From positions 186,001 through 250,000 of IMG/VR virus record IMGVR_UViG_3300034072_002211: DNA of 64,000 nt. One strand, 5' to 3'. Both the position numbers and the translations under genes were made by a program. The notes under the pieces were generated by a model. The model was not told the origin of the DNA. It saw only the letters and a program-made list of their open reading frames with translations, and made no database searches. Every line of letters begins with the position of its first letter. The stretch's first letter is position 1. Shown in pieces: positions 14,090-60,827 of the stretch.

Positions 14090-15637
14090 TCAGCGATACT
14101 GCTTCATCCGCATCATCTTTTCGGCGAATCGCTTCTGCGATTCCATTTCCTGAACCATCGTCTTGCGGTGTTCCAGCTCACGCTGCTCATGTTCCTTTTT
14201 GATCTGGGCTTCCGTGGCTTTGCGCTGGCTCTCAAGCCGCTGCTCATAGAGCCACTGCTCTGCTTCTTCCTTGGTCGGGAAACCCCGCACGGTGTTGCCG
14301 TGCTCGACCATGAAGAAGTCACCCTGTTGTGAAGGACTGCGGCGGCACTTTACGCCGACTTTGGGTTTGCTACGCGGTGCTGGGACGCCCTTCTTCTGCT
14401 GGTAGGTTTCATAGTCGTCGGCGCTGTTGCTGAACTCCTCGAGCTCTGCGAGGATCTCATCCAGGATCATCTCCTTGGTCTTCTCGATATACTTGCGCCC
14501 AACCTCCTCAGGAAGCGCCGGGACGATCTCACCCTGCGTCACGTAGGCCGTGTAGAGCTCCTCATAAGCGGAGGAATCTCGTCGTGCCACAGTATAGCCC
14601 TGATTGCTATACTTGCGAGCACCGATGAACGAGTCCACCTCCTGCTGGGTGTGGAGGCCATAGACCACGCCGGTGTCCTTGAACAGTGCCAACCATTCGG
14701 GACGATTGCCACCCGGAGGACCCTGGAGTCCTTTGGTCGGCGGCGCCAGCAGGCTCTTGCCCACAACGTCTTCGTCCTGAATGCGCTGAAGCTGCGCCAT
14801 GATCTTGGGCTGGTAGTCTGCGGGCGGCGACCACCATTCCGGAGCCGGAGTGGGATCAGCAGTTGCGCCCATGGGGTTGAGCCAGAATGCTGTCCCGCCG
14901 CTCATCCAGTAGAGGTCGTTCTGTGCCCGCTGCATCTCCTCGGTCCAGAAGCTCTTAAGAGGAGCCGGCGGACCCTGCTCGATCAGCATCCGCGACACGC
15001 GCTGCTCCGAGGAGAGGATCATCTGAAGGGCGTTGTCGATTTCCTCTTCGCCCTTGCGGAACTCTTCGACGAACTTGGCCATTTTGTAGGACTTGATGGT
15101 GTCACCGTTGGTCCACGTCCAGACCAGCTTGCTCACAGTGGTCATCAGACCATCACGACCCAAGTTGATGTCCAGTTTCTCTTCGACAGTGGGCCGCATA
15201 TTATAGGCCGGGCTGGCCAGCTTCAGAGCAACGAGTTTCTCGCCTGCTCCCTTACAAGCCCTCAACTGCTCCAGCAGCTTCATTCCATTTTCGGTCAGCC
15301 AGTAGGTCCCACCGCCGTCAATATCGATGAGCTTGAGCTTGTGGCGAAGGTTCTTGATGGCCTCAATCTCATGGTTGGGCCAGTGAGAATCGCCCTCATA
15401 GTTGAGTTCCTGACGCGTCCGATGATCATTGTTGAGACGTGTCATCCTCGAGTCGAGGATCAGGTGGATCTGATACTGCGTCATGCCGCGCCCTTCAAGG
15501 GCCTTGACAGCCTTGTCCCAGCGTAGTCCACGAATCAGTTCGTGAAGGGGGCGGATGGTGTCAAGCTCACGCTTCAGTGAATCGGCGACTCCGAACAAAC
15601 CTTCCTCCTGGACCTGCTTGAGGTATTTGATTGCCAT
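14090..15637 (-). CDS. 515-aa hypothetical protein with C-terminal coiled coil
   Basis: long ORF after promoter element at 15640-15675. Confidence 0.85.
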   Translation of the reverse strand: MAIKYLKQVQEEGLFGVADSLKRELDTIRPLHELIRGLRWDKAVKALEGRGMTQYQIHLILDSRMTRLNNDHRTRQELNYEGDSHWPNHEIEAIKNLRHKLKLIDIDGGGTYWLTENGMKLLEQLRACKGAGEKLVALKLASPAYNMRPTVEEKLDINLGRDGLMTTVSKLVWTWTNGDTIKSYKMAKFVEEFRKGEEEIDNALQMILSSEQRVSRMLIEQGPPAPLKSFWTEEMQRAQNDLYWMSGGTAFWLNPMGATADPTPAPEWWSPPADYQPKIMAQLQRIQDEDVVGKSLLAPPTKGLQGPPGGNRPEWLALFKDTGVVYGLHTQQEVDSFIGARKYSNQGYTVARRDSSAYEELYTAYVTQGEIVPALPEEVGRKYIEKTKEMILDEILAELEEFSNSADDYETYQQKKGVPAPRSKPKVGVKCRRSPSQQGDFFMVEHGNTVRGFPTKEEAEQWLYEQRLESQRKATEAQIKKEHEQRELEHRKTMVQEMESQKRFAEKMMRMKQYR

Positions 15638-15667: not shown

Positions 15668-16330
15668 TCAACCGAAAAACACCAGATCCAATCGGGGAAC
15701 CAAATCTTCATGCCCAATCGCGCGAATGAGCTCGATGACCTTGGCTTCAACGCCCTCATACTTGCTATGGAGGACGCTTACAACTTTTTCGCCGGTCACT
15801 GGTGCTTCTGTGAGACGCACAATGGCTTCTTCGGGAAACTCACAGACACCCGCTCGGCAGAGACTCCACGCTGCGCTGAGTAGCGCGCAGGTATGCTCCT
15901 CGCGGTCCTCGTAGACGTTCTTAAGCCCGATACGCTGTCCCTGTGGGGTCACATAGCTGAGAACTCGCTTGCCAGCCTTGCGAAAGGTATCCCAGGTCAG
16001 ACTGTCAGCGGGAAGACTGTGGATGATTGTTTCGGCTACTGGACCCAGCTTGCCTTCGAAGACCACATGATCGGGAGCCAGACCTCGCCGCAGAATACAG
16101 CGGATGAACTCTGTGACGTCGAGGGTGTTGGCCTCTACGTGGAGGTCGTCGATCAGAATAGCAGCCACGACCAATGAGTCGGCGGTGCTCCCACGATCCA
16201 GATACTCCTTCATGACGTTCAGGCTCTCGTCCTGTTCGTCACCGAAGATGCTATCAGCGTAGATGTGCGCGAATTCCACGAACATCGCGGGCCGAGGCAA
16301 GTTGGCGTTATCTGGTAGGTGACTTCCCAT
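15668..16330 (-). CDS. hypothetical protein, possible HUP/nucleotidyltransferase-fold (SCO2522-like)
   Basis: FVEFAHIY, ILIDDL, CALLSAAW..CRAG motifs; family match is from memory only. Confidence 0.6.
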   Translation of the reverse strand: MGSHLPDNANLPRPAMFVEFAHIYADSIFGDEQDESLNVMKEYLDRGSTADSLVVAAILIDDLHVEANTLDVTEFIRCILRRGLAPDHVVFEGKLGPVAETIIHSLPADSLTWDTFRKAGKRVLSYVTPQGQRIGLKNVYEDREEHTCALLSAAWSLCRAGVCEFPEEAIVRLTEAPVTGEKVVSVLHSKYEGVEAKVIELIRAIGHEDLVPRLDLVFFG

Positions 16331-17307: not shown

Positions 17308-17347
17308 GTCCTGTTTAGCAGAACTGGTGAGGGTGTCAACCAGTTTT
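17308..17347 (-). promoter_or_regulatory. repeated early-promoter/hairpin element
   Basis: GTCCTGTTTAGCAGAACTGGTGA..GTCAACCAGTTTT. Confidence 0.8.
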
Positions 17348-19070
17348 AGGAGAAAAGATGCGGCTCCAAGAGGCATCCAACATGCCAGTGGCAGAACTCC
17401 TCCATGAGGGTGTCCTTCTCAAATCCCAGGTAGCTTGCGAACTCCTGGAAGCCCAGGTCGCAATGCCGGATCTTGATGTCAGTGTTCTTGAAGAAGCGCA
17501 CGTTGGCTTGCCAGATGATCCGGCTGATCTCAAGCTCTGCGGCCGCTGGGATCTTTGCGCGAGCGCGCAGGCTCACGTAGGGCGCAGCATAGGGAACGCG
17601 GGCCTTGGCTCCACTACCCAGGATAACGCTGAGCCCGCCATAGTCGGAGCCAACAATGAAGTCCCGGAGGTCCACCACGTCATAGTATTCAGTGCCCGCA
17701 TAGTCACCGAAGTCGCTGAGGATGACCTGATCGACGATCTTCACGCCTTGGGGCAAGAGATCCAAAGCTGAACGGATAGTACCGCCGGTCACCGTGTCAT
17801 CTTCGACCAGCACATATTCACCATCAGGAATGTTCTGCGCCTGCTCCTCGAGAAAAGGAAAACCCACGCGCTCAGCACGGAACTGTGGCTTCCGTTGGGC
17901 TTCACTGACTGCGAAGTAACGGGTGCTCTGAAACATCTCATCACCGGGGAAGAACGGATCCAGGCTGAGAGTTAGGCGGTCACCAACGACCTTCTCAGCT
18001 TGTGCGAGCTGTTCGCTCACTGGAATGAGGTGGACCTTGTTCTGATGGCCGAGACTTTTGAACACCTGTGCGATACCAAGTCGAACCGTGCTCTGGAGTT
18101 GGATCCTGCGCTTCTCGAGTTCGCTTTCATCAATGATGCTGTGCCAGCGACGAATCGCGAGGTTCTCTTCATTGCGGATCAGGTAGGGCAGTTCGCCCGT
18201 GTCCTGCTTGTCCCAGGTCAACAGGTAGTCGCGGACCTTGGTGTTCAGATGGTCATGATTGCCTTCGCGCGCCAACTTGCTCGAGATGTCGCTCCGCGGG
18301 ATCATGATCGACTGGCCGGGAAGAGCCTCACCAAAGCCTTCGTTATCGGAACCGTAGACGTAGAAGACCCGCAGATATTGACCAACATGGAACTTGAGGT
18401 ATTCCTGGAGCCGCATGACCACATCGGTGAAGTTGATCTCGGCGGGCATGTAACGGGCCGCCCAGGGGTCACAGTCCAGCCAGTTGCTCTCTTGCGTGGC
18501 CAGCTCAACCATCGAGCAACGATGCTCTGCGGGGATGGCAGCGGTGCCACCATACTTCTGCCCCACATAGCTGTCGTGACCGGGCGCAAAGTATCCACCC
18601 AGAACGCTGTAACCCTGATCTTCTGCGATCTTGCGCGCCTCGTCCATCATTGCGATGTGGCCGTTGTGGATGGGAGCCATGCCGCCCGTGGTCACTAGCA
18701 CAATGGGCTCACGGCTGCGATCGGACTTCAGCCATGCGATGAAATGCTTGCGGACCTTCTCCAGTGGAGTGGTCATGAAGACAGGATCCCAAGCCTTGTG
18801 CGACATCGCGAGCTGGGGCAAGCCGTCGTCGAAGAAGCCCGCGCGGTAGAGATCCTTGCTGTCCTGAGTCTTCTCATAAACCCGACGGTAGCAGGGATCC
18901 GCGAGAGCTTTCCAGGCATACCGCTGGGCGGTGCTCATGCCCTCCTCCAAAAGCCTACGGCCTGCGAGGTGGATGTCATTGTGTCCACTCAACGGTTCAA
19001 GCCCGAGGAGCTCATAGAGATTCTCCTTGGGACGATCCATTGTGATACCGCAGGCGTAGGTGTCTGTCAT
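17346..19070 (-). CDS. J-domain-like + NMN/NaMN adenylyltransferase + type I phosphoribosyltransferase fusion
   Basis: NLYELLGL...ALADPCYRRVYE; TGGMAPIHNGH (HxGH), FYVYGSD; VLVEDDTVTGGT PRPP-binding loop. Confidence 0.8.
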   Translation of the reverse strand: MTDTYACGITMDRPKENLYELLGLEPLSGHNDIHLAGRRLLEEGMSTAQRYAWKALADPCYRRVYEKTQDSKDLYRAGFFDDGLPQLAMSHKAWDPVFMTTPLEKVRKHFIAWLKSDRSREPIVLVTTGGMAPIHNGHIAMMDEARKIAEDQGYSVLGGYFAPGHDSYVGQKYGGTAAIPAEHRCSMVELATQESNWLDCDPWAARYMPAEINFTDVVMRLQEYLKFHVGQYLRVFYVYGSDNEGFGEALPGQSIMIPRSDISSKLAREGNHDHLNTKVRDYLLTWDKQDTGELPYLIRNEENLAIRRWHSIIDESELEKRRIQLQSTVRLGIAQVFKSLGHQNKVHLIPVSEQLAQAEKVVGDRLTLSLDPFFPGDEMFQSTRYFAVSEAQRKPQFRAERVGFPFLEEQAQNIPDGEYVLVEDDTVTGGTIRSALDLLPQGVKIVDQVILSDFGDYAGTEYYDVVDLRDFIVGSDYGGLSVILGSGAKARVPYAAPYVSLRARAKIPAAAELEISRIIWQANVRFFKNTDIKIRHCDLGFQEFASYLGFEKDTLMEEFCHWHVGCLLEPHLFS

Positions 19071-27725: not shown

Positions 27726-28505
27726 TTATGCCCTCTCGAATACGATATCAGTGCGGATGATGATCTTCTCCTTGTCCCACTCCTGAGAGCCCTGCTGGAA
27801 GGGCTCCCCATCGTGAAGCAGCCGATGGTCGAACAATAGCGCATGACCAGCGCGTGGCTTGTTGGCGAAGATGACTTCGTCATCGTGACCTGCTCGGTCC
27901 CAATCACTGAAGTCCATTTCGTCCATACGCTTGCCGACTTGTGGATCCCTGAGGAAGCGTGTGGCCCCATACTCGTTGGTCGTCAGGTAGATGACCAGGC
28001 TCATGAGGGTCCGCTGGGTCTCTGTCTTGGCATAGGTGCCATCATAGTGGGCGACCAGCTGTCCGCCATCCTCATAGCGGATAAAGCGCATCAGCGGATT
28101 GACGCCAATAGGCCGCCAGAGGCTGTGGTTGTCGTGGTCCGTGGGCGTGAATGGGTCACAGACTCGCACGTCGGGAAGGAAGGGCTTGAGGCGCCGCCAG
28201 AGGACGTCTGCGAAGGCTTCGTTGAAATTGCTCAGACGGAAGTTGCCGATCTGCTCATAGGGCTTGTTCGCGTAACCGTCCAGTCCTACCGCCTGCCATG
28301 CGTTGCGACGGAGCCCGTCGAGCAGAACGCTGACGATGCTCGGTGGGAGCAAGTTGCTCGCTGTGAAAGCCTTGGCACCATTCTCGAGGTCATGAGCCTT
28401 GTACGACCACACGGGATCGCAGAGGTAGTCGCCGCCGAAATACCCAGCAGAGATAATCTTGTTGGCGTAGTCCGAATAGTCGAAAGAGTTGACGAATCCG
28501 CTCAT
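27726..28505 (-). CDS. 2OG-Fe(II) oxygenase (prolyl-4-hydroxylase-like)
   Basis: RFIRY..G...AHYDG (HxD), distal LLHDG His, IIRTD Arg. Confidence 0.85.
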   Translation of the reverse strand: MSGFVNSFDYSDYANKIISAGYFGGDYLCDPVWSYKAHDLENGAKAFTASNLLPPSIVSVLLDGLRRNAWQAVGLDGYANKPYEQIGNFRLSNFNEAFADVLWRRLKPFLPDVRVCDPFTPTDHDNHSLWRPIGVNPLMRFIRYEDGGQLVAHYDGTYAKTETQRTLMSLVIYLTTNEYGATRFLRDPQVGKRMDEMDFSDWDRAGHDDEVIFANKPRAGHALLFDHRLLHDGEPFQQGSQEWDKEKIIIRTDIVFERA

Positions 28506-29500
28506 GCTGCCCTCCAGGCCGGGTTATCCCAACCACCCTTAACACCAGCTTGCATGACGTCAAGATGGACAGCGGGCGACCGCCCCAGATACTTGTGCGC
28601 GTTGTAGCGATGCATCCGCTCCAAGTTGCCCACGTATTCGTCATATTGACGATAGTCATCCTCGCTGCCCTTTTCGTCGAGGATTTGATCGACCATGATG
28701 CGGGCATTGGTATGCCACTTCATGTGCGTGAACAACTCCACGAAATCGTAGGGCGCACCGAAGACGACCTCATCCGTGGTCGCGTCGAACATATCACCCG
28801 TGGGCGCACGTTCCAGCACCTCGCGCGGCACGCCGAGGAACTCGCCGATCGCATAGACCTCGGACTTGAACATATCGCTGATCAGCTGGAGATCGACCAT
28901 ACCGTCGCTGGCCTTGCCGAAATAACCCAGGTAACCACCCTCGCTGAGGTTGGTCGTGCCGATGACCAGGCCGGGCTGACCCTGACCGGCCAGGACGCTG
29001 GTGATGTAATAATAGGTCGGAGTGCGGGCGTAGCTGGTGACCTGTCCGCGGCACCAGTAATACTTCTCCTCGACCGCCGATCCCAGCACGGCCTCCACGC
29101 TGTTGATGATTGCCTCGCTGATCGGGGAGATGTCGATCTCCAGCGGGTTGACTGCGAATGCCTCGCAGACTTGCTTGGCCAGATTGGCCGCCTTGGTCTG
29201 CCCCGTTACGCCGAGGTTGGTGTGATCAGGCATGGTGACTGCCACGATACGCTCGATAGGCGAACCCGGTTCCTGCTGAGCCCGTGCGACCAGACCGAGA
29301 ACCACAGCACTGTCGATGCCGCCGGAAACCGCGACCACTGCGCTCTTGAGCCCGCTCTGTCTGTAATAGTCGTTGAGCAGCTTGACCTTGGCCTCAACGA
29401 CTCGCTCTACGTTGAAGCCTCGCTGAAGCCGACACATCTCAAGGGCCTCCTTGAGTGGCTGAGACATCTGCATGTTCGTTGCGTGATTACGAATTTCCAT
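28502..29500 (-). CDS. nadE: NH3-dependent NAD+ synthetase
   Basis: VAVSGGIDSAVV PP-loop, GTTNLSEG..GYFGK.SDG, DMFKSEVY..GEFLGVP...L.RAPT. Confidence 0.9.
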   Translation of the reverse strand: MEIRNHATNMQMSQPLKEALEMCRLQRGFNVERVVEAKVKLLNDYYRQSGLKSAVVAVSGGIDSAVVLGLVARAQQEPGSPIERIVAVTMPDHTNLGVTGQTKAANLAKQVCEAFAVNPLEIDISPISEAIINSVEAVLGSAVEEKYYWCRGQVTSYARTPTYYYITSVLAGQGQPGLVIGTTNLSEGGYLGYFGKASDGMVDLQLISDMFKSEVYAIGEFLGVPREVLERAPTGDMFDATTDEVVFGAPYDFVELFTHMKWHTNARIMVDQILDEKGSEDDYRQYDEYVGNLERMHRYNAHKYLGRSPAVHLDVMQAGVKGGWDNPAWRAA

Positions 29501-29798: not shown

Positions 29799-30569
29799 TT
29801 AGCGGCTCAGCTTCATGAGCATTGCGGTGTCTCGGAGGCTGTTGGGCATCCGCATGATCTTCTTGGTTGCGTTGTTCTCAAGCGGGATGCGGTCCCGCTC
29901 ACCGGTGTCCACGCTCTCGATGACCACGCGGCGTTCGTCCGCAAAGCCCTTGACCATACAGATGTCCAGCCCTGCCCCATAGTTCAGGGCCACCACGACC
30001 AGATCACCGATTGTGACTTCCTGATCCAAACGGTCGGTGAAAGTCAGCGGACGCTTCGCTTCATTGATCTGGAAGACACGATCGCCCTGATAGTCGAGCA
30101 GAACGCTCAGATTGTTGTCCACCTCATTGCCGAAGAACTCAGGGTAGATGGTGGCTTCCTTAAACACGATCGGCTTGGTCCCGCTCAGGGTATAAATCCA
30201 TGCTGCTCGTTTGGACCATGCCCAGCCCTTGTTCTTGTCAAAGTCCTTGACGAAGAAGCTCAGGGGAGTGCCACCGCCCTTGGTCAGACGCACATCGTTC
30301 TTGGGCTCGACCGTTGCCGCGAAGCTTGGACCATAGTCACCAAAGTTGGAACGCGGACCCTCTACCATTGCGGGAAAGATGCTGCCGCGGAAGATGCCGT
30401 TGTTGATCTTGATCCAGACCTCGCCCTTGAGAGTAGCCAGGCGATCCAGCAAAGCATCACGCTCTGCGATCTGCTTGACTTCCTTGGCTGTGAGGTTCTG
30501 AGTGGGCACGAAGTTAGAACTCACATGCCACCAGTGATCCATGTTGGTCTGGCGACGAAGCTCAATCAT
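29799..30569 (-). CDS. hypothetical protein, paralogue of 2621..3319
   Basis: DRLDQEVTIGDLVVV...VIESVD...AMLMKL. Confidence 0.8.
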   Translation of the reverse strand: MIELRRQTNMDHWWHVSSNFVPTQNLTAKEVKQIAERDALLDRLATLKGEVWIKINNGIFRGSIFPAMVEGPRSNFGDYGPSFAATVEPKNDVRLTKGGGTPLSFFVKDFDKNKGWAWSKRAAWIYTLSGTKPIVFKEATIYPEFFGNEVDNNLSVLLDYQGDRVFQINEAKRPLTFTDRLDQEVTIGDLVVVALNYGAGLDICMVKGFADERRVVIESVDTGERDRIPLENNATKKIMRMPNSLRDTAMLMKLSR

Positions 30570-38275: not shown

Positions 38276-38908
38276 TCAGACTAGATCCCAGTCGGGATCC
38301 TTGACGTCCTGACGGGCATCGAAACGTGCGAACATGGCGCGCATGTCCTCGTAGAGCTTGGGATCGCCCTTGGTGAAGCCGACCCACTGCTCCTTCTTCT
38401 CCTGGACCCACTTGACCGCGAAGCCAGGATCCTGCGCGACGATGCTGGGCATGTTGGACTTCATATCCGCCAGCTTGACCGTCTGCTGCTCAGGTTCAGC
38501 GAGCCAGGAATGCTCCTTGTCCATGTTCTTTCGGAACTTGCGGTTGCCATCCTCGGGCTTCGAGACGTCAGTGACCTGATAGACGCCGGCGACGACCTTC
38601 TGGGCCACTTCGCTGCCGAATTCTGCGAATGCCGCACCCACATCGCTGAGCGTCTTGTGAGTGTCCTCGACCACATCGTGGCAGATGGCGACTGCCACCG
38701 TGATCGCATCACCGTGGATCGACCGTGCGACCATCTTGGCCACCTGGATCGGGTGAACCATGTAGGGCGCCTTGCTATACTTGCGGCGCTGCCCACCCAG
38801 CACAGGGTCAGGCTTCAGCGCATGGTTCTCATGCGCGTCTGTGGCGAACTCGATTGCCCGCAGGACAATCGGATCCTTCATCACGTCATAGGTTGCTTCT
38901 TCTGTCAT
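38276..38908 (-). CDS. HD-domain (p)ppGpp hydrolase-like protein (SpoT-HD/Mesh1-like)
   Basis: AIEFA..AH...QRRK....PY..HP..VA, CHDVVEDT, VKLAD..SN. Confidence 0.85.
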   Translation of the reverse strand: MTEEATYDVMKDPIVLRAIEFATDAHENHALKPDPVLGGQRRKYSKAPYMVHPIQVAKMVARSIHGDAITVAVAICHDVVEDTHKTLSDVGAAFAEFGSEVAQKVVAGVYQVTDVSKPEDGNRKFRKNMDKEHSWLAEPEQQTVKLADMKSNMPSIVAQDPGFAVKWVQEKKEQWVGFTKGDPKLYEDMRAMFARFDARQDVKDPDWDLV

Positions 38909-39634: not shown

Positions 39635-41329
39635 CTAAGCGTCAACCTGTTCGTATTGACGTAACAGCGCAATGGTGTTTCTGAGCCCGTAAGCCACTGT
39701 GAAAGCACCGAAACGTGGCCCATCGCTTGAACCCAAGAGACATTCGTAGAGAGCTTGGAACCATGACCGCAACGGCTCAAACTCATGCTTCTTGCCGACC
39801 TCATAGACCTGATACTGATAATGCTCGGCGGTCATGTTTTCGAGCATCAGAGAGAAACGGGTCGCAAGCTCACTGAATGCTGCCCGCTCCTTCTCGGTGG
39901 GTTCTCGGCGAGAACGCTCAAACAGCCCCTTGTCGGTTGCGTAGGCGATGACCTTGGGAGCCATTTCCCGCGCATAAGCCGCGGTCGCGTCGGCGAACTC
40001 ACGACCCTGCATCAAGTAAGCGAGCAGGTTCTCTGGCTGCTTGGCCTGAGCCACAACAGCCAAGTTGAGCATGAGTCCATGGGAGATGTCAGAGCTCAGT
40101 GGCTCAGGCAATTCCACGCGGAAGTGCCACGTGGCGTCATCGGGCGTCGTCTCAGCCTTCTGCCGCAACTTGACATACTGGTCTTCCAGCTGGGGCACGA
40201 TCTCTCTGTAGAGCTTCTTTGCCGCGCGTGGGTTCTGAAACATGAACAGCATCAGGGAGCCAGTCGACCCATAGGTCAACCACTGCTCGACCGTAAAGCC
40301 GTTGCCCTTGCTCTTGCTGATCTTTGCGCCGTTTTCGTCCAGGAACAGTTCATAGGTCAGGTTGAGCGGAGGGGTTCCGCCGAGGATCCGACAGATCTGG
40401 TTGGAAGCCTTGACGCTGTCAATGAGGTCCTTGCCAGACATCTCATAGTCCACGTCAAAGTAGACCCAGCGCATCGCCCAGTCGACCTTCCACTGAAGCT
40501 TGGCATTGCCGTTGTGGCTCATCTGGCCACAGTGCTCACCGTCGTCCGTGACCCAGCCGATGTATCCACGTGCGCCAGTTGCCTCGGCCTTGACCTGCAG
40601 AACAGGGCCCTTGCCACACCAACGCGGCATAAACGGACTGTAGGTCGCCTTGCGATCATCCCCCAGCGTGGCGAGCATGATCTCCTGAATCTTGTCGAAG
40701 TTGTCCCAGACGCGGTTCAGCATCTCGTTGAACTTGCCGGACTTGTAATAGCGCGAGGAGCTCACAAAGCTCACAGTGCTGCGGTCGGGCGATGCTCCCA
40801 CTTGGCCGCCATTGTAGTCCTTGAGGATGCGATCCACAAACTCGCAGAGCTTGTCGTTGTTGGCTTCGGCAAAGGTCATGGGATCAACCATGACTTGCGT
40901 GACACCCGGATCGTTGGAATAGGGCGAAGGAACCTCACTGAGCGGCAGGCCCAGATACTCGTTCATCCACTCGGGCATGTCGTCAGGGACCTTACGCATT
41001 GCGTCATAGTCATCCGAGAACATGATCAGACGGGTCTTGTAGGCGTTCTGCGTGAGCTCATTGAAAGCGCGCATCACCCAGAGGGTGCGGACCACCTCAC
41101 CAAAGGTGCCGATATGCGGAGCGCCCGAGGGACCATAGCCGGTCTCAAAGGTCACCACATCACCAGGCTTCTTGCCCTTCTTCTCGATATGAGCGAGAAG
41201 GCTGCGGGCCTCCTGGAAGGGCCAAGACTTTGCCTGGTCGAAAATGGTAGCCTCCTTTGCCTGCTCTGCTTTGATGGCACGGATCCGCTCGATGAGGGCT
41301 TCCTCTTCCCAGCGGTTCATCATAGCCAT
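39635..41329 (-). CDS. lysS: class I lysyl-tRNA synthetase
   Basis: TGYGPSG.PHIGT, KLQWKVDWAMRW, EMSGKDL, KISKSKGN, GPRFG. Confidence 0.95.
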   Translation of the reverse strand: MAMMNRWEEEALIERIRAIKAEQAKEATIFDQAKSWPFQEARSLLAHIEKKGKKPGDVVTFETGYGPSGAPHIGTFGEVVRTLWVMRAFNELTQNAYKTRLIMFSDDYDAMRKVPDDMPEWMNEYLGLPLSEVPSPYSNDPGVTQVMVDPMTFAEANNDKLCEFVDRILKDYNGGQVGASPDRSTVSFVSSSRYYKSGKFNEMLNRVWDNFDKIQEIMLATLGDDRKATYSPFMPRWCGKGPVLQVKAEATGARGYIGWVTDDGEHCGQMSHNGNAKLQWKVDWAMRWVYFDVDYEMSGKDLIDSVKASNQICRILGGTPPLNLTYELFLDENGAKISKSKGNGFTVEQWLTYGSTGSLMLFMFQNPRAAKKLYREIVPQLEDQYVKLRQKAETTPDDATWHFRVELPEPLSSDISHGLMLNLAVVAQAKQPENLLAYLMQGREFADATAAYAREMAPKVIAYATDKGLFERSRREPTEKERAAFSELATRFSLMLENMTAEHYQYQVYEVGKKHEFEPLRSWFQALYECLLGSSDGPRFGAFTVAYGLRNTIALLRQYEQVDA

Positions 41330-42750: not shown

Positions 42751-43683
42751 ATGCTCGTTGCACCAAAGCAACTCGACACTAGCAAAGACATAAAGATGAA
42801 AGGAGGAAAGATCCTCCTGGTTTCTGGTGATGTCTTGACCCCTAGTCTAAGCTTCACGGATGATCCGTCGACTGGCTTCTACAAAACGTCGTCTGTTGCT
42901 TTGGGATATGCTTATCAAGGGAACAGCATTCTAAGCATTGGAACCAACGGGGTCACCAGTGGTTCGTTCAGCGGCTCACTGAGTGGTAATGCTTCCACTT
43001 CAACCAAGTTGGCCACTCCTCGGACCCTAACTTGGTCTGGTGATGCGAGTGGATCACTGACCTTCGATGGTTCAGCAAATGCTACCGCTACCCTTACTTT
43101 GGCTAATTCTGGCGTGGCCGCTGGCACATATTCTACCGTCACTGTAGATGCTAAGGGACGGGTCACTGGCGGCTCAAAGTCTGCCTATCGTTCCTCAATT
43201 TTATTTGCTGGTAACTTCTTCTCTCCCAACAATACAGATTGGGTTTGTCCCAATCTGGCTCCTGCTAGTGCGGATCCGGCCTCTCCTTCTTTGAACGTGA
43301 GAGCATTTGATGACACCATGGAGACAGGTGTTGGATTCTACCAATATATCCCACCACTGGCTACCACGCTGACGTTGGTCATCAAGGCTCGTCCTACAAC
43401 CAATCCTAGTAGTTCTACCAAGTCAGTTATGCGCCTCTATCATAGAGCAATTCCGGATGGCACGGCCATGCCAGCGTGGTCTGCTCCTATTCAGCTAACT
43501 GACTTGAGCTTCCCGTCTGGCGTGAATTATTATAAGACCTTCACCCAGACAATATCATTGGCTTCAGGCGGATGGGCCCCAGGGAACACCTATTTGTTTG
43601 AACTAACTCGTTTTGGCAGTTCAACAGCTGATACTTTGCTGGGAGATCTTTTGATCATTGAAGTTCAGGCTATTTGGTCATGA
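42751..43683 (+). CDS. tail fibre / receptor-binding protein
   Basis: LSGNASTSTKLATPRT..SGDASGS..FDGSAN and SGVAAGTYSTVTVDAKGRVT fibre motifs; low GC. Confidence 0.8.
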   Translation: MLVAPKQLDTSKDIKMKGGKILLVSGDVLTPSLSFTDDPSTGFYKTSSVALGYAYQGNSILSIGTNGVTSGSFSGSLSGNASTSTKLATPRTLTWSGDASGSLTFDGSANATATLTLANSGVAAGTYSTVTVDAKGRVTGGSKSAYRSSILFAGNFFSPNNTDWVCPNLAPASADPASPSLNVRAFDDTMETGVGFYQYIPPLATTLTLVIKARPTTNPSSSTKSVMRLYHRAIPDGTAMPAWSAPIQLTDLSFPSGVNYYKTFTQTISLASGGWAPGNTYLFELTRFGSSTADTLLGDLLIIEVQAIWS

Positions 43684-44384
43684 CGGTTCTTTTCAATGGC
43701 AGCAATCAATATCTAACTCTGGATACCTCTAGTATTCTAGACTTGAGAGATTTCACGCTGACTTGTTGGATTAATCAAGCCACTGTCACATCGAGCACTA
43801 GGGTTGTTTTTGCCAGCAATTCAGCAGAAAACAACTATCAAGCGCCAATAGCTTTTTACATCCAGAACGGTCGACTAGGCCTCCAGATTACCAGGACTAG
43901 AACTATCCTTTGGTTTTGGACTATTACAGAAACGGATACTCTTCTGGGTAATGCTACGATCCCTGTGAATCACTGGACCCATGTTGCTGCGTCATATGAC
44001 GGTAATACGATGAGAGTTTTCGTAGATGGTGTGCCTGACGGAAGTCTGGTATCTGGTTACCAGCCAATAACAGGCAACATCAATGCTACCGTGGGGGCAG
44101 ACTTGACAGGGTCTTCTTCGGCGCAGGGTTTTTGGAGTGGCCAGCTGGCTGACTTCCGTCTTTATAATCGAGAGCTACATCCTGGGGAGATCAAGACCAT
44201 TGCCACTTTGGGTGGGGCTGATGAGATCCTCTATGGACTCCGGGGACGCTGGGGAATGAATGAAGGGGTAGCTAACTCTACGGTGTCTTCTGGCGTTCTA
44301 GATTACAGTATCAACAGAAACAAGGCAAACGCAAGAAACAATCCCAAGTTTCTTCCTGGTGTCTACGCGAATGGTGAGGACTAA
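43680..44384 (+). CDS. LamG/concanavalin-A-like lectin domain protein
   Basis: FNGSNQYL, FTLTCWI, WTHVAASYDG...FVDG, F.G.LADFRLYNR.L. Confidence 0.85.
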   Translation: MTVLFNGSNQYLTLDTSSILDLRDFTLTCWINQATVTSSTRVVFASNSAENNYQAPIAFYIQNGRLGLQITRTRTILWFWTITETDTLLGNATIPVNHWTHVAASYDGNTMRVFVDGVPDGSLVSGYQPITGNINATVGADLTGSSSAQGFWSGQLADFRLYNRELHPGEIKTIATLGGADEILYGLRGRWGMNEGVANSTVSSGVLDYSINRNKANARNNPKFLPGVYANGED

Positions 44385-59294: not shown

Positions 59295-60827
59295 TCATGC
59301 GGCGTAACTGACCTGCCCTTCCCAGTTGCCAACATACTTGTTACCAACCCGCTTCTTGCTGGTCTCGTAAACTGCCAGGACGTCCGGAAGGATGCTGTAG
59401 AGGACATTGATCTGTCCGTCCTGGAAGATCTGCTTACCCGTCTGCCGGTTGACCATTGCGTGAAGGCTGGGGTTGTCAATGGCCATGCGAATCTTGGGAG
59501 CCATGACCTCGAACTCCTTAGCGCCCATCCCGAACCATTCAAAGACCATAGTGGAGATCGTAGCGTTGACCATCACGCCGTGGCCCTTACGGCAAAGTGG
59601 GCAGGTGCTGTTCTGCTTGATGTTGTAAACGTGACCGCAAGGATCGGAGCAGCGAGTCCAGACGTTGTCCTGCTTTGCGTAGGTCTTTGCGCTGATCTCA
59701 CGGTCCTCGCCCTCGAGGACCAAGCCCTTGGCCGCGCGGGGCCACTCGATGGCTTCCACGTAGCCATGCTCCTTGAGGTTGCCCTCGAAGTCGTAGATAA
59801 AGCCTTCGGGCTTGCCCTCACACTTGCGAAGCACTCGGCCGCACATTTGCTGGTAGAACGCAATGTTGCCGACCTTGCGAGTGAGGAAGCAGAACTTGGC
59901 CAGCTTCTCGTCAAAGCCCTCGCAAAGAGCGTCAACGCTGATCAGCACCTCAGTCTCGCCCCGGTGGAAGCGCGCGAAGATTTCCTCACGGACCTTAGCA
60001 GCCTGACGGGGCACATAGTCGACATCACCAACCACACCCTTGCCTGCCGTGACCACCTCGCACTTGATGCCCTCACCCAGGAACTGCGCTTCCAGCATCT
60101 TGCTATGGTTGGTGTCGTCGGTGAAAACAATCGTGCGCTTGTTGGAATGACCAGCAGTGGCGAGCAGCCAGGTCTTCGCCACGTGGGCACCGGGGGTTTC
60201 AAAGTAGCGGGGACGGGCAAGATCACCGCGCGCGATCAGCTCGCTCATTGTGGCCGCGATCACAATGCGATCACCATACCATTCCTCGAGGCTCTCACCC
60301 GGATCGTTCTTCTCACGGTAAGGAGTTGCGGTGAAGCCGACCACCTTTGCGTTGGGCCAGTTCTTGCGAATCTTCTGGAACTCAGCAGCCGTTGCCTTGT
60401 GGGCTTCGTCGAAGAGGATCATTGTGGGAACAAACGAGGGGTCAAAATAGAGATCGTTCGTGACGTTGATGTCCAGGGTGTTGGTCATCGTCTTGGGGAG
60501 AGTCACAAGCAGGTTGCGCTTATAATCACACACAAGCGGATGGCTTTCTGCGCCAACGAGGTAGCTCTCAATTTTGTCGTGGAGGGCGGAGGTCTCAACT
60601 CCAAAGCCATGCTCCATGGTTGCGACCGTCTGGCCCAGGAGGACCTGAAGGTTCACAATAACCAGCACCCGGCCGCCGCGCTGAATTTCCTCATGCGCGA
60701 CATCGCCCATGACCACAGTCTTGCCATAGCCCGTTGGAGCCACCACCAGAGCAGACGGATTTTTCTCTAGCAAGCTAAACACTTGCTTAGTTACGTTGCG
60801 CTGTTCCTCGCGGGGCTTGATTCGCAT
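59295..60827 (-). CDS. SF2 DEAH helicase (RadD/ResIII-like) with C-terminal Zn finger
   Basis: APTGYGKT, DEAH, TATP, EGFD, QMCGRVLR, C..PC..C..C. Confidence 0.9.
   Translation of the reverse strand: MRIKPREEQRNVTKQVFSLLEKNPSALVVAPTGYGKTVVMGDVAHEEIQRGGRVLVIVNLQVLLGQTVATMEHGFGVETSALHDKIESYLVGAESHPLVCDYKRNLLVTLPKTMTNTLDINVTNDLYFDPSFVPTMILFDEAHKATAAEFQKIRKNWPNAKVVGFTATPYREKNDPGESLEEWYGDRIVIAATMSELIARGDLARPRYFETPGAHVAKTWLLATAGHSNKRTIVFTDDTNHSKMLEAQFLGEGIKCEVVTAGKGVVGDVDYVPRQAAKVREEIFARFHRGETEVLISVDALCEGFDEKLAKFCFLTRKVGNIAFYQQMCGRVLRKCEGKPEGFIYDFEGNLKEHGYVEAIEWPRAAKGLVLEGEDREISAKTYAKQDNVWTRCSDPCGHVYNIKQNSTCPLCRKGHGVMVNATISTMVFEWFGMGAKEFEVMAPKIRMAIDNPSLHAMVNRQTGKQIFQDGQINVLYSILPDVLAVYETSKKRVGNKYVGNWEGQVSYAA

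What the first reader, a model, noticed from the sequence alone, without database searches (positions are those of the whole stretch)
27726..29500. NadE translationally coupled to a 2OG-Fe(II) oxygenase
The NadE stop overlaps the oxygenase ATG (ATGA at 28502-28505). NadE amidates NaAD to NAD, and it is not part of the described NARP1/NARP2 sets. The role of a coupled hydroxylase is unclear. Inference: either the deamidated arm of a new NAD-rescue pathway, or an ATP-pyrophosphatase/hydroxylase pair making a modified base or cofactor.
Basis: partly seen in the sequence, partly recalled or inferred. Interest (0 to 1): 0.62.

Follow-up and report, generated by a model that had tools for sequence, protein, structure and literature searches.

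The report
Phage NadE–oxygenase NAD-type synthesis module
The overlapping NadE and 2OG-oxygenase genes are real and are two parts of a widespread but undescribed enzyme set (often fused into one protein) that, with an NMN-adenylyltransferase/phosphoribosyltransferase protein 9 kb away, looks like a self-contained line for building NAD or a close NAD relative, in which an oxygen-dependent step of unknown purpose is locked to the final amidation.

Summary
On the minus strand a 332-aa NadE-family gene (28502-29500) ends in an ATGA overlap with a 259-aa 2OG-Fe(II) oxygenase gene (27726-28505).

The pairing is not chance. Of 109 evaluable loci holding this oxygenase family, 108 have the NadE type nearby. 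In 55 the two are one in-frame protein, and in 42 NadE lies directly upstream.

A third partner is almost as constant. It is a 500-620 aa protein with an NMNAT domain and a type-I phosphoribosyltransferase-like domain (window 17346-19070). Seven loci fuse all three. Optional extras, never seen together, are an aspartate-racemase-like gene and an unknown ~200-aa protein (window 15668-16330).

The module occurs in jumbo phages, a Burkholderia contig, CPR bacteria, Myxococcota, Obscuribacterales, Bdellovibrionota and Armatimonadota. Complete relatives of this phage also carry a canonical NadE next to a NAPRTase-family gene, so the module is not plain redundancy. In some CPR genomes it is the only NadE/NMNAT.

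The chemistry of the oxygenase step is unresolved. My preferred guess (about 25%) is that it oxidatively releases the amide from an amino-acid nitrogen donor. No paper found describes the module. It is a new variant of NAD salvage.

The parts
28502..29500 (-). Long-type NadE (332 aa): a PP-loop ATP-pyrophosphatase of the NAD synthetase family, with no glutaminase domain
   Evidence: PF02540 at E 1e-31 and TIGR00552 at 109.6 bits, above its cut-off. Best solved relatives are P. aeruginosa NadE 4xfd (E 7e-20) and Francisella NadE 3fiu (E 1e-16). Alignment A5 keeps SGGxDS, E187, K196, D199, K212 and H302-K303. It differs from canonical NadE in the pocket motifs (GQxxSYxRTP, GTTN, YFGK), a 25-35 aa insertion and a C-terminal SPAVHLD...GGW extension.
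27726..28505 (-). 2OG-Fe(II) oxygenase (259 aa) of the prolyl/lysyl-hydroxylase-like branch
   Evidence: PF13640 at E 8e-8. AlphaFold model pLDDT 93. Best solved folds are OGFOD1 (Z 15.5), algal P4H (14.8), Tpa1 (14.3), LH3 (14.2) and PolD (14.1). H153, D155, H227, H231, R140, Y144 and R90 are invariant in all 101 family sequences and R251 in 99 of them, in fused and separate forms alike.
28502..28505 (-). ATGA stop/start overlap between NadE and the oxygenase
   Evidence: Read from the sequence. Similar 4-nt or 1-nt overlaps occur in L011, L033, L061, L125 and L022.
28511..28515 (-). GGAGG Shine-Dalgarno-like site, 5 nt upstream of the oxygenase ATG and inside the NadE 3' end
   Evidence: Read from the sequence. 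Inference only.
17346..19070 (-). Third module component (574 aa): a J-domain-like N-terminus without HPD, an NMN/NaMN adenylyltransferase domain, and a type-I phosphoribosyltransferase-like domain
   Evidence: PF01467 and TIGR00482 hits. Model pLDDT 92. Residues 96-288 match NMNAT at Z 21.0 (9iw1), 19.2 (5z9r) and 16.8 (M. tuberculosis NadD); residues 13-93 match J domains at Z 7-8. The C-terminal domain matches APRT/HGPRT PRPP loops at E 0.015 and Atlas PRT clusters at TM 0.81. It is 33% identical over its full length to the gene directly downstream of the oxygenase in Burkholderia (E 8e-90). It is adjacent or fused to the oxygenase in 77 of 107 loci.
15668..16330 (-). Accessory protein of about 200 aa, family unknown (invariant E, H, Y, D, E, C, W, E). 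It recurs next to the module in 16 other loci.
   Evidence: A profile of A4 hits the own genome at E 8.8e-47, at window 15674-16285. tblastn finds it in 16 loci. No Pfam or PDB sequence match. It is never found together with the racemase-like gene.

Best explanation
**Shown**
- The two overlapping genes are the core pair of a conserved multi-enzyme module.
- The module consists of a distinct long-type NadE, a catalytically intact P4H-like 2OG/Fe(II) oxygenase, and an NMNAT plus type-I-PRT-like protein.
- It has one of two optional extras: an aspartate-racemase-like enzyme or an unknown ~200-aa protein.
- In this phage the module is split into two sub-clusters, at 27.7-29.5 kb and 15.7-19.1 kb.

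**Inferred from the domain set**
- The module works as a self-contained line that takes a pyridine carboxylate base to a dinucleotide amide.
- The PRT-like domain joins the base to PRPP, the NMNAT domain adds AMP, and the NadE adenylates the carboxylate and converts it to an amide.
- The end product is NAD+ or a close derivative.
- The oxygenase acts on the same small molecule, directly before or after the NadE step, because it is the partner most often fused to NadE.

**My preferred specific mechanism (about 25%, pure inference)**
- The long NadE does not use free ammonia. It ligates an amino acid, with Asp the candidate, to the adenylated nicotinate carboxylate. Argininosuccinate synthetase, a PP-loop relative, does the same with aspartate.
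- The oxygenase then hydroxylates the appended residue, so that it falls off as a keto acid and leaves the carboxamide.
- This would be an oxidative counterpart of the lyase step in Asp-dependent aminations, and of peptide amidation by PHM/PAL.

**In the phage**
- The module would raise or protect the NAD pool during infection, independently of the canonical PncB/NadE route that complete relatives also carry.
For: **Linkage**
- 108 of 109 evaluable oxygenase-family loci have this NadE type within 10 kb: 55 in-frame fusions, 42 directly upstream.
- Independent gene calls list 575-630 aa proteins with PF02540 plus PF13640, and 803-1045 aa proteins with PF01467 plus PF02540.
- Seven loci fuse all three proteins (L035, L040, L044, L045, L046, L094, L099).
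- The NMNAT/PRT gene is adjacent or fused in 77 of 107 loci. In complete 416-465 kb relatives it lies about 10 kb from the pair.

**Enzyme competence**
- The oxygenase metal and 2OG residues are invariant or nearly so in 101 sequences.
- NadE catalytic residues are kept.
- NMNAT motifs (HxGH, SPxHDxY, DPWE, ISSTxxR-like) and the PRT acidic pair D424-D425 with T431 are invariant or nearly so.

**NAD context**
- L024 places the trio beside PncA, PncB, a NadD-like gene, a Nudix gene and a short NadE.
- L022 has NAD kinase nearby and L026 a NADAR gene.
- Xanthomonas phages X1 and BUDD place it beside NadM-Nudix and NAMPT.

**Product probably NAD**
- In a 0.8 Mb Peregrinibacteria MAG the module holds the only NadE-family and NMNAT-like genes found. 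No NAPRTase-family gene or NadA was found there.
- Uhrbacteria and Saccharibacteria MAGs and a 1.1 Mb gammaproteobacterial MAG likewise have only the fused NadE.

**Amino-acid donor idea**
- 25 loci have an Asp-racemase-like gene with both catalytic Cys directly upstream of NadE. Its best solved relatives are McyF and aspartate racemases.
- The NadE pocket changes (T to G in FFTK/YFGK, R to Y, N to Q) sit at the nicotinate site.
- The oxygenase fold belongs to enzymes that hydroxylate amide-linked residues or amino-acid-bearing nucleotides: P4H, OGFOD1, LH3, PolD, PasI.
Against: - No biochemical data exist. The substrate of every component is inferred from family membership.
- Complete phage relatives and large bacterial genomes carry canonical NadE, and often NadA or a NAPRTase-family gene, besides the module. 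That fits a product other than plain NAD at least as well.
- The racemase-like gene is present in only about a fifth of loci and is absent from this phage.
- An O2-dependent step is awkward for an essential pathway in CPR bacteria, many of which live without oxygen.
- MAG incompleteness weakens the 'only NadE' argument.
- The PRT-like assignment rests on weak sequence matches (E 0.015) and predicted-structure similarity.
- The fold matches of the oxygenase are flat (Z 13-15.5 across many subfamilies) and cannot name a substrate.
- One locus (L010) has the oxygenase without NadE within 10 kb.
Confidence: 0.55

Rival explanations
1. Modified-cofactor reading. The oxygenase hydroxylates the pyridine ring or ribose of NaMN, NaAD or NAD, and the long NadE is specialised to amidate that modified substrate. 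The module would then make a hydroxylated NAD analogue rather than NAD. Possible roles are a cofactor or decoy that resists or inhibits NAD-cleaving defence or toxin enzymes, or a signal.
For: - The module coexists with canonical NadE and a NAPRTase-family gene in complete jumbo phages, and with NadA and other NadE genes in large bacteria. A non-redundant product is therefore attractive.
- L020, L024, L068, L081 and L087 have a short NadE within a few kb of the long one.
- The nicotinate-pocket residues of the long NadE differ consistently from the canonical ones.
- The distribution is patchy and includes phages and a contig with a weak TraG-like hit. That is typical of conflict systems.
Against: - It gives no role to the Asp-racemase-like gene.
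- Small CPR genomes appear to have only this NadE and NMNAT, which suggests the product is the real cofactor.
- I found no paper in the searched library on an enzymatically made hydroxylated NAD in bacteria or phages.
Confidence: 0.2
2. Precursor-supply reading. The oxygenase makes the PRT substrate from an unusual pyridine precursor, for example by oxidative N-demethylation of N-methylnicotinate or oxidation of a reduced or alkylated pyridine. The rest of the module is a Preiss-Handler-like line with a new type of PRT.
For: - The module would then use a precursor different from the nicotinate handled by PncB. That explains its coexistence with canonical genes.
- AlkB-type demethylases are structural neighbours at Z about 12.
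- The PRT-like domain is type I, unlike all known nicotinate, nicotinamide or quinolinate PRTs. The last point is from my own knowledge.
Against: - The oxygenase is fused to NadE, the last step, five times more often than to the PRT-bearing protein (55 against 11). That is unexpected for a first-step enzyme.
- It gives no role to the racemase-like gene.
- No transporter recurs beside the module.
Confidence: 0.1
3. Regulatory or protein-hydroxylase reading. The oxygenase hydroxylates a protein, either NadE itself or a host translation factor as PPHD, OGFOD1 and Tpa1 do. Alternatively it serves as an O2/2OG sensor that gates NAD synthesis. There would be no chemical link to the nucleotide.
For: - The nearest solved folds are protein prolyl and lysyl hydroxylases.
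- 2OG is the classical nitrogen-status signal, and NadE is known to be under PII/2OG control in some bacteria (PMC7196632, listed).
Against: - Several arginines are invariant or nearly so (R90, R140, R183, R251), with R105, R143 and R228 at 90% or more in A1. That suggests a small anionic substrate.
- Fusion to NadE in 55 loci and into triple fusions across phyla is more typical of consecutive metabolic steps.
- PolD and PasI, which act on nucleotides, sit in the same fold neighbourhood.
Confidence: 0.1
4. Chance neighbours. Two unrelated auxiliary genes happen to abut in a densely packed phage genome.
For: 4-nt overlaps are common in phage operons, and the closest relatives lack the overlap.
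Against: 108 of 109 loci keep the pair, 55 as a single protein, across phages and at least eight bacterial phyla.
Confidence: 0.01

Closest known systems
NH3-dependent NAD+ synthetase NadE (e.g. P. aeruginosa 4xfd, B. subtilis 1kqp) and the Francisella NadE (3fiu), which I recall from my own knowledge as a NaMN-preferring NMN synthetase
   Same: Same PP-loop fold family, with SGGxDS, the Mg/ATP residues and the HK motif conserved. It is a single domain without a glutaminase. The YF(G/T)K and KS.V motifs resemble the Francisella enzyme.
   Different: It forms its own clade, with GTTN in place of GTDH, SYxRTP in place of KARxR, a 25-35 aa insertion and a C-terminal extension. It scores below the equivalog cut-offs (124 against 255 bits). 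It is always tied to a 2OG oxygenase and often fused to it. It coexists with a canonical NadE in many genomes.
Preiss-Handler clusters of 'NAD-jumbo phages' (pncB-nadD-nadE; PMC11662467)
   Same: Jumbo-phage-encoded NAD synthesis through a deamidated intermediate. Complete relatives of this phage carry a canonical NadE next to a NAPRTase-family gene.
   Different: The module has no PncB-type (type II) PRT. It has a type-I-like PRT domain fused to a eukaryote-like NMNAT, plus an oxygenase that the paper never mentions (0 occurrences).
Phage NAD reconstitution pathways NARP1 (Adps + Namat), NARP2 (Nampt + Nmnat) and NARP3 (PnuC + NadR)
   Same: Phage-borne routes to NAD that could offset NAD-depleting defence, and an NMNAT activity is present.
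   Different: No NAMPT/Namat-family gene and no PnuC were found in the record. A PRPS-like Adps was not looked for. NadE and a 2OG oxygenase are in none of the three pathways. The module is also common in cellular genomes.
Glutamine-dependent NAD synthetase (nitrilase-like glutaminase domain + NadE domain)
   Same: A two-domain NadE of about 550-680 aa in which a second catalytic domain is fused to the synthetase. The natural NadE-oxygenase fusions are 575-630 aa.
   Different: The partner domain is C-terminal and is a 2OG/Fe(II) oxygenase, not an N-terminal CN-hydrolase. Whether it delivers nitrogen is only my hypothesis.
Prolyl/lysyl hydroxylase-like 2OG oxygenases (OGFOD1/Tpa1, algal and viral P4H, LH3, PPHD) and the nucleotide-acting PolD/PasI
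   Same: DSBH fold with an HxD...H triad and a basic 2OG-binding residue. Z is 13-15.5 over about 160-190 residues.
   Different: 12-22% identity, with no sequence-level PDB match. It has a family-specific N-terminal half with several invariant Arg and Trp. The substrate is unknown.
Argininosuccinate synthetase/lyase and peptidylglycine alpha-amidating enzyme PHM/PAL (mechanistic analogies, from my own knowledge)
   Same: The first is a PP-loop enzyme that uses aspartate as the nucleophile on an adenylated intermediate. The second forms an amide by hydroxylating an appended residue and releasing it.
   Different: No homology to the lyase or to PHM/PAL. The analogy is untested.

Membership tests
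NAD synthetase family (PF02540 / TIGR00552 NadE) | Profile match above the curated cut-off | tested here: met
   PF02540 at 110 bits (cut-off 21) and TIGR00552 at 109.6 bits (cut-off 63.65). The equivalog models NF010587 (124 against 255) and NF001979 (72 against 250) are not reached.
NAD synthetase family (PF02540 / TIGR00552 NadE) | PP-loop SGGxDS and the conserved acidic/basic catalytic residues | tested here: met
   S59, G60, G61, D63, S64, E187, D199, K212, H302 and K303 are invariant across long and canonical forms, and K196 is in at least 90%.
NAD synthetase family (PF02540 / TIGR00552 NadE) | Amidation of NaAD (or NaMN) with ammonia | not testable with these tools
   This needs an enzyme assay. 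The pocket motifs differ from canonical NadE.
Glutamine-dependent NadE | N-terminal CN-hydrolase (glutaminase) domain | tested here: not met
   The 332-aa protein carries no NadE-external domain: besides PF02540, only weak sub-threshold hits to related PP-loop families.
2OG-Fe(II) oxygenase superfamily (PF13640 branch) | HxD...H iron triad, a basic 2OG-binding residue and the DSBH fold | tested here: met
   H153, D155, H227 and H231 are invariant in all 101 sequences and R251 in 99. Model pLDDT is 93 and Z is 15.5 to OGFOD1.
Protein prolyl 4-hydroxylases | Hydroxylation of a peptidyl proline | not testable with these tools
   Only fold similarity, at 12-22% identity. No substrate information.
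NMN/NaMN adenylyltransferase (NadD/NMNAT) | HxGH and ISSTxxR-type motifs, a pyridine-stacking Trp and the nucleotidyltransferase fold | tested here: met
   G129, P133 and H138 are invariant and H135 nearly so. SPxHDxY, DPW(E/A) and SS..R are present. Z is 21.0 to 9iw1 and 19.2 to 5z9r. The profile scores E 1e-29 to plant NMNAT. TIGR00482 is below its cut-off (33 against 112 bits).
Type I phosphoribosyltransferases | PRPP-binding loop (acidic pair followed by T-G-x-T) on a PRT fold | tested here: inconclusive
   D424, D425 and T431 are invariant. APRT/HGPRT loop matches reach only E 0.015-0.07. Atlas PRT-named clusters score 0.93 and TM 0.81. The UMP synthase OPRT domain gives Z 6.5. The domain was not folded alone.
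NARP1 (Adps + Namat) | PRPS-like Adps and NAMPT-like Namat genes | tested here: not met
   No NAPRTase/NAMPT-family match in the 277 kb record, which is only 60% complete. Adps was not searched for.
NARP2 (Nampt + Nmnat) | NAMPT gene together with an NMNAT gene | tested here: not met
   An NMNAT domain is present, but no NAMPT family member is in the record. Complete relatives have one NAPRTase-family gene about 250 kb from the module.
NARP3 (PnuC + NadR) | PnuC transporter gene | tested here: not met
   No PF04973 match in the record.
Canonical Preiss-Handler set (PncA, PncB, NadD, NadE) | PncB (type II NAPRTase) and PncA (isochorismatase family) | tested here: not met
   No PF04095 or PF00857 match in the own record. 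The record is incomplete, and relatives have a NAPRTase-family gene elsewhere.
Known anti-phage defence systems (PADLOC 2023) | Match to a defence-system protein model | tested here: not met
   The only match is a generic '2OG' Cas-associated model for the oxygenase. Nothing matches NadE, the NMNAT/PRT protein or the racemase-like protein.

The most novel reading that the evidence does not exclude
The NadE-oxygenase pair, a single protein in half of its occurrences, would be a new kind of amide-forming enzyme system. A PP-loop NadE homologue would ligate an amino acid, possibly D- or L-aspartate, to the nicotinate carboxylate of NaAD or NaMN. A P4H-like 2OG oxygenase would then remove it oxidatively to leave nicotinamide. 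Together with a previously unknown type-I pyridine phosphoribosyltransferase fused to NMNAT, this would be a fourth, ammonia- and glutamine-independent way to finish NAD. It would be used by phages, CPR bacteria and predatory bacteria.
Probability: 0.22. Interest if true: 0.88.

Novelty: new variant of a known kind. Interest (0 to 1): 0.72.

Why it matters
NAD supply is now recognised as a central battlefield between phages and bacterial immunity. It is also a bottleneck for reduced-genome symbionts.

This is a recurrent, compact module, often a single 1,100-1,500 aa protein. It contains every activity needed to go from a base to a dinucleotide amide, plus an oxygenase that no known NAD pathway needs.

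- If the product is NAD, the module defines a new salvage route with a new PRT type and a new oxygen-dependent amidation logic. It may also be the only NAD route of some CPR bacteria.
- If the product is a modified NAD, it is a new cofactor or decoy in phage-host and inter-bacterial conflict.

In either case, the proteins now annotated simply as 'NAD(+) synthase' in the databases searched are mis-described, because they carry an extra catalytic domain.

Tried and rejected
- **Co-folding:** NadE with the oxygenase gave no verdict (score under the mark, controls not run). It counts neither for nor against binding.
- **Phage DNA search:** megablast of the region against GenBank phages found nothing.
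- **Defence models:** PADLOC gave no defence-system assignment.
- **Operon boundaries:** the promoter and terminator scan around the pair was no better than shuffles. GC is uniform at about 0.57, so there is no sign of a recent island.
- **The 256-aa gene upstream of NadE (29799-30569):** tested as a possible divergent Asp racemase. It shows no similarity, and no PF01177 member is in the record.
- **The ~200-aa accessory protein:** no Pfam or PDB sequence match. hhalign shows no relation to PncA, to the PRT-like domain or to the racemase-like protein.
- **The 515-aa neighbour (14090-15637):** no family match and no homologue in any module locus, so it is not counted as a part.
- **Other neighbours:** clustering found no further recurrent gene and no transporter.
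- **Literature:** searches for a NadE/2OG oxygenase fusion or an aspartate-dependent NAD synthetase found nothing relevant.
- **Tree:** the careful tree search did not finish, so only the quick tree is used. It serves only to place the window in a 13-member phage clade.
- **Not run:** the big representative-protein search, because it was not needed for any claim.
Full report
**1. The observation**

All relevant genes lie on the minus strand. A 332-aa ORF runs from the ATG at 29500 to the stop at 28502. It matches the NAD synthetase family: PF02540 at E 1.1e-31, TIGR00552 at 109.6 bits against a cut-off of 63.65, and phrog_11189 'NAD synthetase' at E 4e-33. A 259-aa ORF runs from 28505 to 27726 and matches 2OG-FeII_Oxy_3 (PF13640, E 8e-8, above the gathering score), with weaker PhyH similarity.

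The plus strand reads TCAT at 28502-28505. On the coding strand this is ATGA, so the oxygenase ATG overlaps the NadE TGA. A GGAGG sits five bases upstream of that ATG. Both start codons are backed by conserved N-termini in relatives.

**2. Where the window comes from**

The window is bases 186001-250000 of a 277 kb IMG/VR record labelled 'provirus' and estimated 60% complete. The same oxygenase sequence is recorded on a 468 kb contig. The syntenic relatives are 416-465 kb phage genomes rated 90-100% complete, and two of the four (G002, G021) have direct terminal repeats. The record is therefore most likely a piece of a ~470 kb jumbo phage and not an integrated prophage. GC content is even at about 0.57 across the region.

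**3. The pair is conserved, and very often it is one protein**

I aligned oxygenase homologues (A1). With that alignment I fetched loci from viral contigs (11), one-per-species genomes (22) and metagenomes (80), and took further loci from exact-protein look-ups. tblastn then located NadE in each locus.

Of 109 evaluable loci with a family oxygenase:

| NadE arrangement relative to the oxygenase | Loci |
|---|---|
| Fused in frame, no stop between | 55 |
| Directly upstream | 42 |
| 0.3-5 kb upstream | 6 |
| Other same-strand arrangement | 5 |
| None within 10 kb (L010) | 1 |

Some loci are near-duplicates: 95 of the 101 oxygenase sequences are distinct. The fusions are not an artefact of my ORF tracing. 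Independent gene calls list 575-630 aa proteins with both PF02540 and PF13640 in 99 clusters, and where a source names them it is only 'NAD(+) synthase'.

The cultured phages Xanthomonas X1 and BUDD keep the two genes adjacent, and the Variovorax V45v66 record has matches to both about 110 bp apart. In Acinetobacter ME3 they lie about 2 kb apart. In all of them the oxygenase comes first. Two unrelated neighbours can be excluded.

**4. The pair is half of a larger module**

In most loci the gene directly downstream of the oxygenase encodes a 500-620 aa protein. In 107 evaluable loci it is:

| Position of the 500-620 aa gene | Loci |
|---|---|
| Adjacent downstream | 66 |
| Fused to the oxygenase | 11 |
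| Within a few kb (5 downstream, 4 upstream) | 9 |
| Not within the flank | 21 |

Seven loci encode NadE, oxygenase and this protein as one 1,130-1,480 aa ORF (L035, L040, L044 Paraliomyxa, L045, L046 Nannocystis, L094, L099).

The window has this gene at 17346-19070. It is 33% identical over its full length to the Burkholderia gene that follows the oxygenase (E 8e-90). The complete phage relatives also carry it, about 10 kb from the pair.

Its AlphaFold model (pLDDT 92) shows three parts:

- **Residues 13-93:** a J-domain-like bundle (Z 7-8) that lacks the HPD motif.
- **Residues 96-288:** an NMN/NaMN adenylyltransferase (Z 21.0 to 9iw1, 19.2 to mouse NMNAT3, 16.8 to M. tuberculosis NadD; profile E 1e-29 to plant NMNAT). 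The HxGH, SPxHDxY, DPW and SS..R motifs are present.
- **Residues about 300-570:** a domain with a PRPP-loop-like motif whose acidic pair and Thr are invariant (D424, D425, T431). It resembles APRT/HGPRT loops weakly (E 0.015) and phosphoribosyltransferase-named Atlas clusters more clearly (feature score 0.93, TM 0.81). I treat the PRT assignment as probable, not proven.

Two accessory genes recur next to the module and never occur together.

- **An Asp/Glu-racemase-family gene** sits directly upstream of NadE in 25 loci. Its best solved relatives are McyF and aspartate racemases, and both catalytic Cys motifs are present.
- **A ~200-aa protein of unknown family** occurs in 16 loci. This phage has it at 15668-16330 (E 8.8e-47), and so do its complete relatives.

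No other gene and no transporter recurs.

**5. State of the enzymes**

*Oxygenase.* H153, D155, H227, H231, R90, R140 and Y144 are invariant in all 101 sequences and R251 in 99, whether fused or separate. The model (pLDDT 93) is a DSBH fold. It lies closest to the prolyl/lysyl-hydroxylase branch: OGFOD1 Z 15.5, algal P4H 14.8, Tpa1 14.3, LH3 14.2. PolD (14.1) and PasI (12.9), which act on nucleotides, are in the same range. The score distribution is flat and names no substrate. No solved protein matches by sequence.

*NadE.* It keeps every catalytic residue shared with canonical NadE but forms a distinct type: GTTN for GTDH, SYxRTP for KARxR, YFGK for FFTK, a 25-35 aa insertion and a C-terminal extension. 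The YF.K and KS.V motifs recall the Francisella enzyme 3fiu, which I remember as NaMN-preferring. That memory is a lead and was not tested here.

**6. What the module is for: evidence pulling both ways**

*For a role in pyridine-nucleotide metabolism:*

- L024 places the trio beside PncA, PncB, a NadD-like gene, a Nudix gene and a short NadE.
- L022 has NAD kinase nearby and L026 a NADAR gene.
- X1 and BUDD have NadM-Nudix and NAMPT two to four genes away. The gene upstream of their oxygenase is a 371-aa protein with a nucleotidyltransferase domain and a PRT-like motif that I read by eye.

*For authentic NAD as the product:*

- In a 0.8 Mb Peregrinibacteria MAG the module holds the only NadE-family and NMNAT-like genes found. 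No NAPRTase-family gene or NadA was found there.
- Uhrbacteria and Saccharibacteria MAGs and a 1.1 Mb gammaproteobacterial MAG also show only the fused NadE.
- MAG incompleteness limits this argument.

*Against simple redundancy with the known pathway:*

- The complete phage relatives carry a second, canonical NadE (138-215 bits) next to a NAPRTase-family gene about 250 kb from the module.
- Five loci have a short NadE within a few kb of the long one.
- The large bacterial genomes have NadA and other NadE genes.
- The own record lacks NAPRTase, PncA, PnuC and NAD kinase matches, but it is only 60% complete.

**7. Mechanism**

*Shown.* A conserved set of four to five activities exists. NadE and the oxygenase are its tightest pair, and all catalytic motifs are intact.

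*Inferred.* The set takes a base to a mononucleotide (PRT-like domain), then to a dinucleotide (NMNAT), then to an amide (NadE). The oxygenase acts on the same molecule next to the NadE step.

*The oxygenase step.* I commit to one guess at about 25%. The long NadE would use an amino acid as the nitrogen nucleophile. Aspartate is the candidate because of the racemase-like gene, and because argininosuccinate synthetase, also a PP-loop enzyme, does exactly this. The P4H-like oxygenase, whose relatives hydroxylate amide-linked residues, would then hydroxylate the appended residue so that it leaves as a keto acid. The carboxamide would remain.

This guess accounts for the fusion order, the altered nicotinate-side pocket, the many conserved arginines and the racemase-like gene. 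It does not explain why phages with a canonical NadE keep the module, or what the ~200-aa protein does.

*Rivals.*

| Rival | My estimate |
|---|---|
| A hydroxylated NAD analogue | about 20% |
| Generation of the base from an unusual precursor | about 10% |
| A protein-hydroxylase or sensor role | about 10% |
| Something I have not thought of | the rest |

**8. Comparison with what is known**

NadE in jumbo-phage Preiss-Handler clusters is published (PMC11662467), and the X1 paper lists nadE among its auxiliary genes. Neither mentions the oxygenase. NARP1, NARP2 and NARP3 contain neither NadE nor an oxygenase.

Searches of the held literature for a NadE/2OG-oxygenase fusion, an oxygenase domain on NAD synthetase, or an aspartate-dependent NAD synthetase returned nothing relevant. 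PADLOC has no matching system.

I therefore rate the pair as a new variant of a known kind: NAD salvage or synthesis with an unprecedented obligate oxygenase and a new PRT type. There is a real chance that the chemistry is categorically new.

**9. Verdict**

- Interest is 0.72. The finding is surprising to a specialist, broad in distribution, and directly testable with cultured phages (X1, BUDD, ME3) and cultured bacteria (the Burkholderia operon; the Paraliomyxa triple fusion).

Noticed in passing
window 39635-41329 (-): A 564-aa class I lysyl-tRNA synthetase (PF01921, E 5e-94) is encoded by the phage. Class I LysRS is the rarer, archaeal-type form. No tRNA genes occur in the window.
   Followed up: no
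window 38276-38908 (-): A 210-aa HD_4 domain protein (RelA/SpoT-type HD hydrolase family, E 6e-10). It is 65-84% identical in related jumbo phages, and could be a (p)ppGpp hydrolase.
   Followed up: no
whole record (G000, 277 kb): IMG/VR labels the record a 'provirus' at 60% completeness. The oxygenase is recorded on a 468 kb contig, and the syntenic relatives are 416-465 kb phages rated 90-100% complete, two of them with terminal repeats. The record is probably a trimmed jumbo-phage contig, not a prophage.
   Followed up: partly
window 17346-19070 (-), residues 13-93 of the protein: The NMNAT/PRT protein starts with a J-domain-like helical bundle (Z 7-8 to ERdj5 and DnaJ J domains) that lacks the HPD motif. 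Some phage versions lack this part.
   Followed up: partly
G001:146685-148810, G002:323094-325226, G021:28881-31080, G003:37172-39449: Complete relatives carry a second, canonical NadE (138-215 bits, in G001 and G002 inside 601-627 aa open frames) next to a NAPRTase-family gene, far from the module. This region is missing from the window's incomplete record.
   Followed up: partly
L010 (IMGVR_UViG_3300033068_000523): This is the only family oxygenase without a NadE or NMNAT/PRT gene within 10 kb. It sits on a 78 kb viral contig rated 20% complete. Its sister L009 has both genes, 3-5 kb away.
   Followed up: no
L095:12361-12978 (-) and L102:11247-11669 (+): Two metagenomic loci carry a second copy of the oxygenase next to the module.
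   Followed up: no
L019 (Burkholderia cenocepacia GCA_001541445.1, LNCR01000023.1): The four-gene operon (racemase-like, NadE, oxygenase, NMNAT/PRT), with overlapping gene ends, lies about 4 kb from a gene with a weak TraG-like P-loop hit. This may indicate a mobile element.
   Followed up: no
window 43674-44384 (+) and 59295-60827 (-): A Laminin_G_3 (concanavalin-like lectin) protein, possibly a tail-fibre or adhesin part, and a 510-aa ResIII/DEAD/SNF2-type helicase.
   Followed up: no
ESM Atlas and BFVD neighbours of the oxygenase model: The closest predicted-structure neighbour is a 651-member cluster of eukaryotic (mostly molluscan) 2OG dioxygenases of about 317 aa, at TM 0.80 over the whole protein. 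Giant-virus proteins (Yasminevirus, Fadolivirus, Marseillevirus) also match. The fold subtype reaches beyond prokaryotes.
   Followed up: no
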